Shown: positions 4,287-4,298 of the stretch, in pieces
How the letters are laid out: each line of letters opens with the position of its first letter
Position numbering within the stretch: position 1 is the stretch's first letter
Assembly: GCA_044892505.1 (NCBI GenBank)
Contig: CM097882.1
Coordinates: forward strand, 513,298,001 to 513,362,000
Direction of reading: 5' to 3'
DNA length: 64,000 bases
Source of the DNA: Schmidtea nova
Lineage: Eukaryota
Made by a program: the position numbers and the translations under genes
Notes under the pieces: model-generated
What the model was told of the DNA's origin: nothing
Databases searched by the model: none
What the model saw: the letters and a program-made list of their open reading frames with translations, nothing else

Positions 4287-4298
4287 AGCTATCCGGGC
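4287..4298 (+). other. Atypical primer-binding site complementary to the tRNA-Lys(UUU) 5' end
   Basis: AGCTATCCGGGC directly after the LTR; its reverse complement GCCCGGATAGCT equals nt 1-12 of canonical metazoan tRNA-Lys(UUU). No TGG-type PBS is present. Confidence 0.8.

What the first reader, a model, noticed from the sequence alone, without database searches (positions are those of the whole stretch)
4287..4298. LTR retrotransposon apparently primed by the 5' END of tRNA-Lys(UUU)
Seen: directly after the 5' LTR (boundary fixed by identical LTRs and the ATTTT TSD) is AGCTATCCGGGC, with no TGG-type PBS. Its complement is not in the LTR, so Tf1-style self-priming is excluded. Established: GCCCGGAUAGCU is nt 1-12 of canonical metazoan tRNA-Lys(UUU). 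Normal PBSs pair with the 3' CCA end; Drosophila copia and yeast Ty5 use a 5' tRNAi-Met half cut in the anticodon arm; Tf1 anneals the first 11 nt of its own RNA and cuts them with RNase H. Inference: the primer would be a 12-nt 5' fragment of tRNA-Lys with a 3'-OH at U12 in the D-stem. This could be a trans version of Tf1-type cleavage priming or use of a host 5' tRF. A 12/12 GC-rich match at exactly this position in ~70% AT DNA is very unlikely by chance. I cannot confirm whether this is already catalogued.
Basis: partly seen in the sequence, partly recalled or inferred. Interest (0 to 1): 0.88.

Follow-up and report, generated by a model that had tools for sequence, protein, structure and literature searches.

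The report
Retrotransposon primer site matching tRNA 5' end
A small LTR retrotransposon, and nearly all of a large family of relatives in invertebrates, carries at its primer-binding position 12 bases complementary to the first 12 bases of a host tRNA rather than the last 18, which points to a way of starting reverse transcription that I could not find described.

Summary
A 3,536-bp LTR retrotransposon lies at 4196-7731, with identical 91-nt TG..CA LTRs, a 5-bp ATTTT duplication, gag, and pol in the order PR-RT-RNase H-IN. AGCTATCCGGGC follows the 5' LTR directly and lies one base before the gag ATG. Its complement equals nt 1-12 of human and zebrafish tRNA-Lys(UUU).

Among 89 fetched relatives (33-51% pol identity; arthropods and metagenomes), the same slot almost always holds a 12-mer of the same form. 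It occurs in discrete types. Three match published tRNA 5' ends: Lys-UUU, Lys-CUU and Phe-GAA. One type changes the base opposite tRNA nt 12 as well. The flanks are not conserved. No element carries a self-complement, so Tf1-type self-priming is excluded. No TGG-type site is present.

Most likely the primer is tRNA nt 1-12, released by a cut at the end of the 12-bp duplex. Neither priming nor the cutting enzyme is shown. The host's tRNAs could not be read, and six types remain unassigned. Nine literature searches found no description of such a site, and recent reviews list only 3'-end, anticodon-region and self-priming. Verdict: real, family-wide, probably a new variant of tRNA priming.

The parts
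4191..4195 (+). Target-site duplication, left copy (ATTTT)
   Evidence: The same 5 bases lie after the 3' LTR. Homology to a diverged paralogous segment stops exactly here.
4196..4286 (+). 5' LTR, 91 nt, TG..CA termini
   Evidence: 100% identical to 7641-7731.
4287..4298 (+). 12-nt primer-binding site AGCTATCCGGGC, complementary to nt 1-12 of tRNA-Lys(UUU)
   Evidence: The same slot is filled in relatives.
4300..5016 (+). gag (238 aa, open), with a CCHC zinc knuckle at 4900-4947
   Evidence: ORF. Pfam zf-CCHC, E 1.4e-6.
4902..7656 (+). pol (protease, RT, RNase H, integrase). The reading frame is broken once, by one frameshift; there are no other breaks. It ends inside the 3' LTR.
   Evidence: ORFs. 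Pfam RVT_1, DUF7047, RVT_3/RNase_H and rve. Relatives align over window 5131-7650 with a single interruption. A DSG protease motif lies in the ORF that overlaps the gag end.
5677..6033 (+). Reverse-transcriptase core (Pfam RVT_1 match), with the YIDD motif conserved
   Evidence: Invariant Y228 D230 D231 in alignment A1.
6112..6282 (+). DUF7047 (PF23088), modelled as the helical thumb of the RT
   Evidence: Pfam E 2.9e-18. Helices at residues 292-356 in the model.
6334..6711 (+). RNase H domain of the cellular/retroviral Pfam type, with the four acidic catalytic residues conserved
   Evidence: Pfam RVT_3 and RNase_H. Invariant D377 E413 D437 D496. Fold.
7015..7242 (+). Integrase catalytic core (rve), preceded by an HHCC zinc finger
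   Evidence: PDB sequence hits to retroviral and Ty3 integrases. Invariant H529 H533 C562 C565.
7633..7640 (+). Polypurine-like tract GGTGGGGA abutting the 3' LTR
   Evidence: Relatives have GGGGGAG/GGGGGGA at the same place.
7641..7731 (+). 3' LTR
7732..7736 (+). Target-site duplication, right copy (ATTTT)
14631..16987 (+). Second copy of the 3' part of the element, including a third LTR at 16897-16987. It is carried by a 9.26-kb tandem duplication (5376-14635 = 14631-23891) and is not an independent insertion.
   Evidence: Self-BLAST: 99.99% identity over 9,261 columns.

Best explanation
The 12 bases after the 5' LTR are the element's primer-binding site, and they pair with the first 12 nucleotides of a host tRNA. 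In this copy that tRNA has the 5' end of metazoan tRNA-Lys(UUU); in relatives it is Phe, Lys-CUU or others. DNA synthesis must run from the site into U5, so the primer's 3'-OH has to be at tRNA nt 12. The primer is therefore a 12-nt 5'-terminal piece of the tRNA. The duplex cannot be longer: on one side it ends at the tRNA's 5' terminus, and on the other the conserved terminal A of the LTR faces C13. I think the piece is most likely cut from the annealed tRNA at the end of the 12-bp RNA duplex by the element's own RNase H. This would be a version in trans of what Tf1 does with the first 11 nt of its own transcript. Plus-strand strong-stop DNA would then copy the 12-nt primer and run off at tRNA nt 1, which regenerates a 12-nt site for the second jump. 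What is shown: the position, the complementarity, the family-wide conservation in discrete tRNA-like types, and the absence of other primer sites. What is inferred: that priming occurs there, where the 3' end lies, and which enzyme cuts.
For: (1) Anatomy: the LTR is followed by the 12-mer, then one base, then the gag ATG. No TGG site and no self-complement are present. (2) The complement equals nt 1-12 of tRNA-Lys(UUU), with a chance of 3.5e-9 per site. (3) Relatives: 50 of 84 fetched loci carried CA|AGCTAnnnnGGC, a median of 6 nt before gag. Many of the remainder are contigs that lack the 5' end. A motif-free count anchored on gag gives 31/35 automatically and 34/35 after checking the ATG choice. 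Later fetches gave Caligus with AGCTATCACGGC, Amphibalanus with the Phe type, and L088 with 11/12 of the Lys type. (4) The types are discrete. GCCGAAATAGCT is the Drosophila tRNA-Phe-GAA 5' end. GCCCGGCTAGCT is the tRNA-Lys-CUU 5' end. GCCCGGATAGCT is Lys-UUU. One type (CGCTACCGAGGC in L059 and L082) also changes the base opposite nt 12, so that position follows the partner RNA. (5) A type is kept unchanged among elements down to about 50-60% pol identity, while it differs between clades, for example L062 versus L028 at 69%. Flanking columns are near random, with a top-base share of 0.3-0.6. (6) The site abuts the LTR's CA in elements with exact 5-bp TSDs. (7) RNase H, RT and integrase catalytic residues are invariant in the family. 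(8) There is precedent for cutting an RNA duplex to release an 11-nt primer: Tf1 and Tj1 (PMC4600332). There is also precedent for a cleaved 5' tRNA fragment as primer: copia and Ty5 (PMC5371799; PMC10886601).
Against: There is no experimental evidence of priming, of a 12-nt tRNA piece, or of cleavage. No tRNA gene of any host could be read: none lies in the window or in the loci held at the time of the scan (L001-L087). Host-by-host co-variation is therefore untested, and six types have no assigned tRNA. The strict-motif counts were partly forced by the search pattern; only searches are free of that. The window copy itself has a broken pol, so it says nothing about activity. A 12-nt 5' tRNA fragment is shorter than the usual 5' tRF classes (my own knowledge). 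RNase H cleavage of an RNA:RNA duplex is known only for Tf1-type enzymes, to which this pol is not close.
Confidence: 0.65

Rival explanations
1. The site and the 12-nt tRNA primer are the same, but the primer is a ready-made host 5' tRNA fragment that is packaged and annealed. It is not a tRNA cut in place by the element's RNase H.
For: 5' tRNA fragments of Lys-UUU and other tRNAs are abundant and conserved (PMC4688932). A 3' tRNA fragment is discussed as a retroviral primer in the tRF reviews returned. The sequence data do not distinguish this from cutting in place.
Against: The reported 5' fragments are longer (30 nt; 16-35 nt per PMC7515703), and any 3' overhang beyond nt 12 would be unpaired and could not be extended. 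Many tRNA nucleases leave a cyclic phosphate rather than a 3'-OH (my own knowledge). The exact 12-nt length across different tRNAs fits a cut defined by the duplex better.
Confidence: 0.2
2. The 12-mer binds the 5' strand of a tRNA, or a 5' tRF, for another purpose such as RNA packaging, translation control of gag, or host silencing. Minus-strand synthesis is then primed elsewhere or otherwise.
For: The site lies 0-26 nt from the gag ATG, so binding there could affect translation. tRFs complementary to primer sites are known silencers (PMC7472051).
Against: No other candidate primer site follows the LTR in the window or its relatives. The block abuts the LTR end exactly, as a primer site must. 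A pure silencing target would be lost, not kept across 50% protein divergence.
Confidence: 0.08
3. Tf1-type self-priming: the 12-mer pairs with the start of the element's own transcript.
For: There is no TGG site, and the site length of 12 is close to Tf1's 11.
Against: No complement of the 12-mer exists in the LTR or anywhere in the window element, even with 2 mismatches. In 54 occurrences across relatives, none has a complement of 9 nt or more in its contig. The two 8-nt hits lie outside the elements.
Confidence: 0.01
4. The match is chance, or a relic of read-through copying of a whole tRNA primer, and has no function.
For: None beyond the shortness of the match.
Against: The chance is 3.5e-9 per site. 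Conservation is family-wide with discrete types. A read-through relic would begin with the TGG end of the tRNA, which is absent.
Confidence: 0.01

Closest known systems
Tf1 / Tf2 / Tj1 self-priming LTR retrotransposons of fission yeasts (and the Tf1/sushi group)
   Same: The site lacks TGG and pairs with the 5'-terminal 11-12 nt of an RNA. The primer's 3'-OH must be made by a cut at the end of that short RNA duplex (PMC4600332, which cites Levin 1995 and 1996).
   Different: There the RNA is the element's own transcript start, which lies in the LTR. Here no such complement exists and the partner has the 5' end of host tRNAs. The pol here is not of the chromovirus type.
Half-tRNA priming of copia, 1731 and Ty5, and of fungal Copia and Helenus elements
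   Same: The primer is a cleaved 5' fragment of a host tRNA, and the site does not match the CCA end (PMC5371799; PMC10886601).
   Different: Those sites pair with the anticodon stem-loop, so the fragment is about half a tRNA, and the elements belong to the Copia superfamily with integrase before RT. Here the site pairs with nt 1-12, the tRNAs are of Lys and Phe type, and the order is RT-RNase H-IN.
Canonical 3'-end tRNA priming (retroviruses, Ty3, Drosophila gypsy with tRNA-Lys)
   Same: A host tRNA is used, including Lys isoacceptors, and the site lies directly after U5.
   Different: The canonical site begins with TGG and matches about 18 nt of the 3' end. That site is absent here, and the opposite end of the tRNA is matched.
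Ty3/gypsy-like (Metaviridae in the broad sense) LTR retrotransposons
   Same: gag with a CCHC knuckle; PR-RT-RNase H-IN order; HHCC plus DDE integrase; TG..CA termini; 5-bp TSD. In the model, RNase H follows the RT thumb directly, and the best superposition is caulimovirus RT (8r0s, TM 0.71).
   Different: RNase H matches Pfam RVT_3/RNase_H rather than the usual gypsy RT_RNaseH families. The thumb is the separate family DUF7047. Elements are only 3.5-4.6 kb. No tree was built, so the clade is not named.
Odin retrotransposons, lokiretroviruses and Retroviridae (dual RNase H with tether)
   Same: The RNase H is of the cellular/retroviral Pfam type. The best E-values in the fold and profile searches are foamy-virus PR-RT and HIV-1 p66.
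   Different: The model leaves no room for a tether domain between the thumb (residues 292-356) and RNase H (from 361). There is no env.

Membership tests
LTR retrotransposon (general) | Two direct LTRs with TG..CA termini, flanked by a short target duplication | tested here: met
   91-nt LTRs 100% identical; TG..CA; 5-bp ATTTT duplication.
LTR retrotransposon (general) | gag and pol with protease, RT, RNase H and integrase; polypurine tract before the 3' LTR | tested here: met
   Pfam hits; DSG motif; GGTGGGGA at 7633-7640. pol is broken once.
Ty3/gypsy (Metaviridae) | Domain order RT - RNase H - integrase | tested here: met
   Order of Pfam matches along the 812-aa ORF.
Ty3/gypsy (Metaviridae) | Placement inside the gypsy clade in an RT or pol tree with reference elements | not tested
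Only PDB profile and fold hits are available.
Ty3/gypsy (Metaviridae) | RNase H of the gypsy type (Pfam RT_RNaseH / RT_RNaseH_2) | tested here: not met
   The matches are RVT_3 and RNase_H instead (and the Pfam columns).
Tf1-type self-priming elements | The primer site is complementary to the first ~11 nt of the element's own transcript, inside the 5' LTR | tested here: not met
   No complement with up to 2 mismatches in the window. None of 9 nt or more in any relative.
Tf1-type self-priming elements | RNase H of the element cuts the RNA duplex to free the primer | not testable with these tools
   This is biochemistry. Only the conservation of the RNase H catalytic residues can be stated.
copia / Ty5 half-tRNA priming | The site is complementary to the anticodon stem-loop of a tRNA (initiator Met in copia and Ty5) | tested here: not met
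   The complement is nt 1-12 of tRNA-Lys(UUU).
copia / Ty5 half-tRNA priming | Copia-superfamily pol order (integrase before RT) | tested here: not met
   The integrase is last.
Canonical 3'-end tRNA priming | A site beginning with TGG and complementary to the tRNA 3' end, within a few bases of the LTR | tested here: not met
   The sequence after the LTR is the 12-mer, then the gag ATG. The Lys 3'-end complement gives only chance matches. Relatives have no conserved TGG block.
Troyka | CG..CG termini and 3-bp target duplications | tested here: not met
   TG..CA and 5 bp here and in relatives; definition from PMC12440569.
Odin / lokiretrovirus / Retroviridae | A tether (degenerate RNase H) domain between RT and a second RNase H | tested here: inconclusive
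   The model shows thumb helices at 292-356, then RNase H from 361, with no extra domain. This rests on a predicted model only.
BEL/Pao | Pao-type protease and BEL-specific gag and integrase-tail Pfam families | tested here: not met
   None among the Pfam hits of the window proteins or of 120 relatives.
Proposed class: 5'-terminal tRNA primer site | A 12-nt block abutting the LTR's CA and complementary to nt 1-12 of a tRNA | tested here: met
   Window; relatives with Phe and Lys-CUU types.
Proposed class: 5'-terminal tRNA primer site | The block matches a tRNA encoded by the same host | not testable with these tools
   No host tRNA genes could be fetched. There are none in the window or in loci L001-L087.

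The most novel reading that the evidence does not exclude
A widespread lineage of compact metazoan LTR retrotransposons starts reverse transcription by annealing its RNA to the first 12 nt of a host tRNA and cutting that tRNA after nt 12 with its own RNase H. This would be a Tf1-like cleavage-priming mechanism acting in trans on a host RNA. It would be a third way of using tRNA, beside the 3' end and the anticodon half. Such a site is invisible to 3'-tRF silencing and to annotation tools that look for 3'-end sites, but it is exposed to the abundant 5' tRNA fragments.
Probability: 0.4. Interest if true: 0.85.

Novelty: new variant of a known kind. Interest (0 to 1): 0.78.

Why it matters
Accounts of how LTR elements start minus-strand synthesis list three modes: the tRNA 3' end (sometimes with a bipartite site), a half-tRNA paired through its anticodon arm, and Tf1-type self-priming (PMC5371799; PMC10886601). 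A site matching the tRNA's 5' terminus would add a fourth mode. It would also link the tRNA-dependent and self-priming modes mechanistically.

There are practical consequences too. Tools that look for primer sites using tRNA 3' ends will report these elements as lacking one. The host defence that uses 3' tRNA fragments against primer sites (PMC7472051) would not recognise them. By contrast, the very abundant 5' tRNA fragments and halves are perfectly complementary to this site, so they could act as primers or as inhibitors. The family is large and is found in crustaceans, a leafhopper, Hydra and many aquatic metagenomes, so this is not a single odd copy.

Tried and rejected
- **Self-priming:** searched for the complement of each element's own 12-mer. 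None was found.
- **Canonical Lys site:** only chance matches.
- **tRNA genes and Rfam families in the window:** none.
- **tRNA genes in relatives:** none in 30 loci scanned with ARAGORN, and none in loci L001-L087 in a later scan. Host co-variation therefore could not be tested.
- **Host identification:** a search with an intact Tc1-type transposase gave nothing above about 50% identity. The host remains an unidentified AT-rich metazoan.
- **IMG/VR scan with pol:** no relatives.
- **Literature for the six unassigned 12-mers:** only unrelated primer sequences.
- **Literature for a described 5'-end primer site:** nine searches found none.
- **Troyka and Odin membership:** considered. Troyka was rejected on termini and TSD. 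Odin was left inconclusive because the model shows no tether.
- **First pol/PBS clustering script:** it used a faulty pattern and returned two loci. It was corrected.
- **L002 (Macrosteles):** the LTR pair first found by BLAST was too short. The 12-mer lies further on, at 2986.
- **Left out:** a scan of the element for further complementarity to the whole tRNA-Lys. The full tRNA exists here only as letters in a paper, without a reference.

Full report
**What is in the window**

A complete small LTR retrotransposon lies at 4196-7731 (3,536 bp).
- Its two LTRs are 91 nt long, 100% identical, and begin with TG and end with CA.
- They are flanked by a 5-bp duplication, ATTTT.
- The mechanical repeat is 92 nt only because the duplication starts with A.
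- Directly after the 5' LTR comes AGCTATCCGGGC (4287-4298), then one base, then the gag ATG at 4300.
- gag (4300-5016) is open and has a CCHC knuckle.
- pol carries Pfam matches in the order RVT_1, DUF7047, RVT_3/RNase_H, rve.
- A protease DSG motif lies in the reading frame that overlaps the end of gag.
- A purine run, GGTGGGGA, abuts the 3' LTR.
- Compared with its nearest relatives, pol is interrupted once, by a frameshift. gag is intact.
- A third LTR at 16897-16987 is not a second insertion. A 9.26-kb head-to-tail duplication (5376-14635 = 14631-23891, 99.99% identity) starts inside the element and repeats its 3' part and flank.

**Is the 12-mer more than chance?**

It occurs once in 64 kb. 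With two mismatches allowed, there is one other match, far from the element. At 29.6% G+C the probability of this 12-mer at a given site is 3.5e-9. [quoted passage not shown]

There is no TGG-type site after the LTR. The complement of the tRNA-Lys 3' end gives only chance-level matches, with 2-3 mismatches and none on the element's coding strand. The complement of the 12-mer is not in the LTR.

**The test in relatives**

The pol ORF finds a large family at 33-51% identity. Named members come from a leafhopper, crabs, a sea louse, a barnacle and Hydra. Most members sit on 3-5-kb metagenome or run-assembly contigs. I fetched 89 loci.

In the genomic copies with both LTRs, the layout is the same as in the window: TG..CA termini and a 5-bp duplication. 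The duplication is exact in L003, L004 and L036, and 4/5 in L016 and L034. A 12-mer of the form AGCTAnnnnGGC directly follows the LTR's CA.

A pattern scan found this block in 50 of the 84 loci held at that point, a median of 6 nt (range 0-26) before a gag-sized ORF. Many of the remainder are contigs that lack the 5' end.

That scan imposes part of the pattern, so I also scored loci from the gag side without it. Of 35 loci with a knuckle-bearing gag and at least 45 nt upstream of its first ATG:
- 27 have the strict block;
- 4 have a near variant;
- 3 of the 4 'none' cases have the block at a slightly different distance;
- only L079 lacks it.

**The types**

Written as the complementary RNA 5' end, the types are as follows.

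| Complement of the 12-mer | Loci | Assignment |
|---|---|---|
| GCCGAAATAGCT | 16, plus Amphibalanus | tRNA-Phe-GAA |
| GCCGCGATAGCT | 10 | unassigned |
| GCCTAGATAGCT | 9, including Petrolisthes | unassigned |
| GCCGTGATAGCT | 4, plus L006, L018 and Caligus | unassigned |
| GCCGGGATAGCT | 4 | unassigned |
| GCCGAGGTAGCT | 3 | unassigned |
| GCCCGGATAGCT | window and L080; L088 at 11/12 | tRNA-Lys-UUU |
| GCCCGGCTAGCT | 1 | tRNA-Lys-CUU |
| GCCGTAATAGCT | 1 | unassigned |
| GCCTCGGTAGCG | L059, L082 | unassigned |

- The first type is the 5' end of Drosophila tRNA-Phe-GAA: the Northern probe in PMC7038984 ends in its complement.
- GCCCGGCTAGCT is the 5' end of tRNA-Lys-CUU (PMC12140204).
- The last type also changes the base opposite nt 12, so that position follows the partner RNA and is not an invariant feature of the element.
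- The other six types could not be assigned from the literature.

**Selection on the block**

Elements that share a type can be as far apart as about 50-60% pol identity. Examples are the GCCTAGATAGCT clade at 57-99% and the Phe type at 52-88%. Related clades can carry different types, for example L062 and L028 at 69%. Columns on either side of the block, beyond the ACA of the LTR, are close to random, with a top-base share of 0.3-0.6. Together this is the pattern expected of a site that must match one of a few discrete host RNAs and occasionally switches partner.

**Exclusion of self-priming**

For 54 occurrences I looked for the complement of each element's own 12-mer in its contig. None has 9 nt or more. 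The two 8-nt hits lie outside the elements.

**How it most likely works**

A primer site next to U5 must present a 3'-OH facing the LTR. With the site paired to tRNA nt 1-12, that end is nt 12. The duplex cannot extend further. The next tRNA base is C13, and it faces the conserved terminal A of the LTR. On the other side, the duplex ends at the tRNA's 5' terminus, and the base after the block is not conserved. The primer would therefore be exactly tRNA nt 1-12.

Two routes to that piece are open.
- **Cut in place.** The annealed tRNA is cut at the end of the RNA duplex by the element's RNase H, as shown for the 11-nt self-primer of Tf1 (PMC4600332, with its references to Levin 1995 and 1996). 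I favour this route because the length is exact across different tRNAs and coincides with the end of the duplex.
- **Ready-made fragment.** A host 5' fragment is packaged and annealed. The reported 5' fragments are longer.

Plus-strand strong-stop DNA would copy the 12-nt primer and stop by run-off at nt 1, which regenerates the site. All types have A at tRNA position 9. From general knowledge, G9 is often methylated at N1 in eukaryotic tRNAs, which would block pairing, so this may be part of the choice of partner. All of this paragraph is inference.

**What kind of element is it?**

The features are:
- domain order RT-RNase H-IN;
- an HHCC plus DDE integrase;
- TG..CA termini and a 5-bp duplication;
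- invariant catalytic residues of RT, RNase H and integrase.

A model of the 812-aa ORF (mean pLDDT 83) shows fingers and palm, a helical thumb that corresponds to DUF7047, then RNase H directly, then integrase. Fold search gives foamy-virus PR-RT and HIV-1 p66 the best E-values, and caulimovirus RT the best superposition (TM 0.71). Profile search of the PDB puts the integrase nearest to betaretroviral and Ty3 integrases.

It is not Troyka, which has CG..CG termini and a 3-bp duplication (PMC12440569). It shows no BEL/Pao families. It has no visible tether domain of the Odin or retrovirus kind. I did not build a tree, so I call it a gypsy-like lineage without naming a clade.

**Is it known?**

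Nine full-text searches found no paper that describes a primer site complementary to the 5' end of a tRNA. They included the 12-mers themselves in both orientations. The sequence hits are tRNA probes and tRF tables. A 2017 review of retrotransposon reverse transcription and a 2024 paper by a Repbase curator list only 3'-end, anticodon-loop and self-priming modes.

**Limits**

- The host of the window is an unidentified AT-rich metazoan. Its flanks hold a CNOT1-like exon, a nuclear-receptor zinc finger and a MATH domain. The search with a resident transposase found nothing close.
- No host tRNA gene could be read.
- Most relatives come from metagenomes of unknown hosts.
- The 12 bases do not by themselves name the isoacceptor outside metazoans.

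**Notes on procedure**

- While working out how pol is interrupted, I reasoned in my working about roughly where the frame changes. That is more than the rule for this finding allows. I stopped there, and no place is given in the notes or in this report.
- The alignment tool printed a consensus line by itself.
- N runs (48607-48950, 54075-54964, 63022-63170) were left as they are.

Noticed in passing
window 5376-14635 and 14631-23891: A 9.26-kb head-to-tail duplication at 99.99% identity begins inside the retrotransposon. The 3' part of the element, its 3' LTR and a flank with a CNOT1-like exon (10695-11798 and 19951-21054, minus strand) are therefore present twice. It is either a very recent duplication or an assembly artefact.
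   Followed up: partly
window 3774-4195 and 7743-10147 versus 41955-45401 (minus strand): Both flanks of the element have a diverged inverted paralogue (76-93% identity) that lacks the element. The left-flank homology ends exactly at the TSD/LTR junction. The paralogue has about 280 bp of unrelated sequence at that point.
   Followed up: partly
window 32341-33817, ORF 32569-33576 (minus): An apparently intact Tc1/mariner-type transposon. It has a 335-aa DDE_3 transposase with HTH domains, between ~190-bp inverted ends (32341-32527 and 33637-33817, 96% identity), next to dinucleotide-type repeats. The best database relatives are only about 50% identical.
   Followed up: partly
window 57374-59126; 34941-35465; 2063-2614: hAT-like pieces (a Spin-doc-type zinc finger and a hAT dimerisation domain), a nuclear-receptor C4 zinc-finger exon, and a MATH-domain ORF. 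They show that the host is a metazoan.
   Followed up: no
window 61470-62660 and 63413-63944: Two tandem-repeat arrays, with many staggered self-matches at 76-88% identity. They were not characterised.
   Followed up: no
loci L009, L010, L020-L024, L041, L049, L052, L058, L063 and others: Many metagenome contigs of relatives have identical sequence at both ends, at arbitrary points of the element. They are circularly permuted assemblies of about one element length. This is expected when LTR-internal-LTR collapses in a graph assembler, but it would also fit circular or tandem forms.
   Followed up: no
L088:1-80 and 3729-3829: The closest relative that has a 5' end (49% pol identity) also has a very short LTR (~100 nt). 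It carries AGGTATCCGGGC, 11/12 of the window's block. The differing base is opposite the normally invariant G10 of tRNAs, so it is probably a mutation in that copy.
   Followed up: partly
L002 (Macrosteles quadrilineatus, GCA_028750875.1): The annotated 1,039-aa 'uncharacterized protein' is a spliced gene model laid over an LTR retrotransposon of this family. The Phe-type 12-mer lies at L002:2986, just before the model's start.
   Followed up: no
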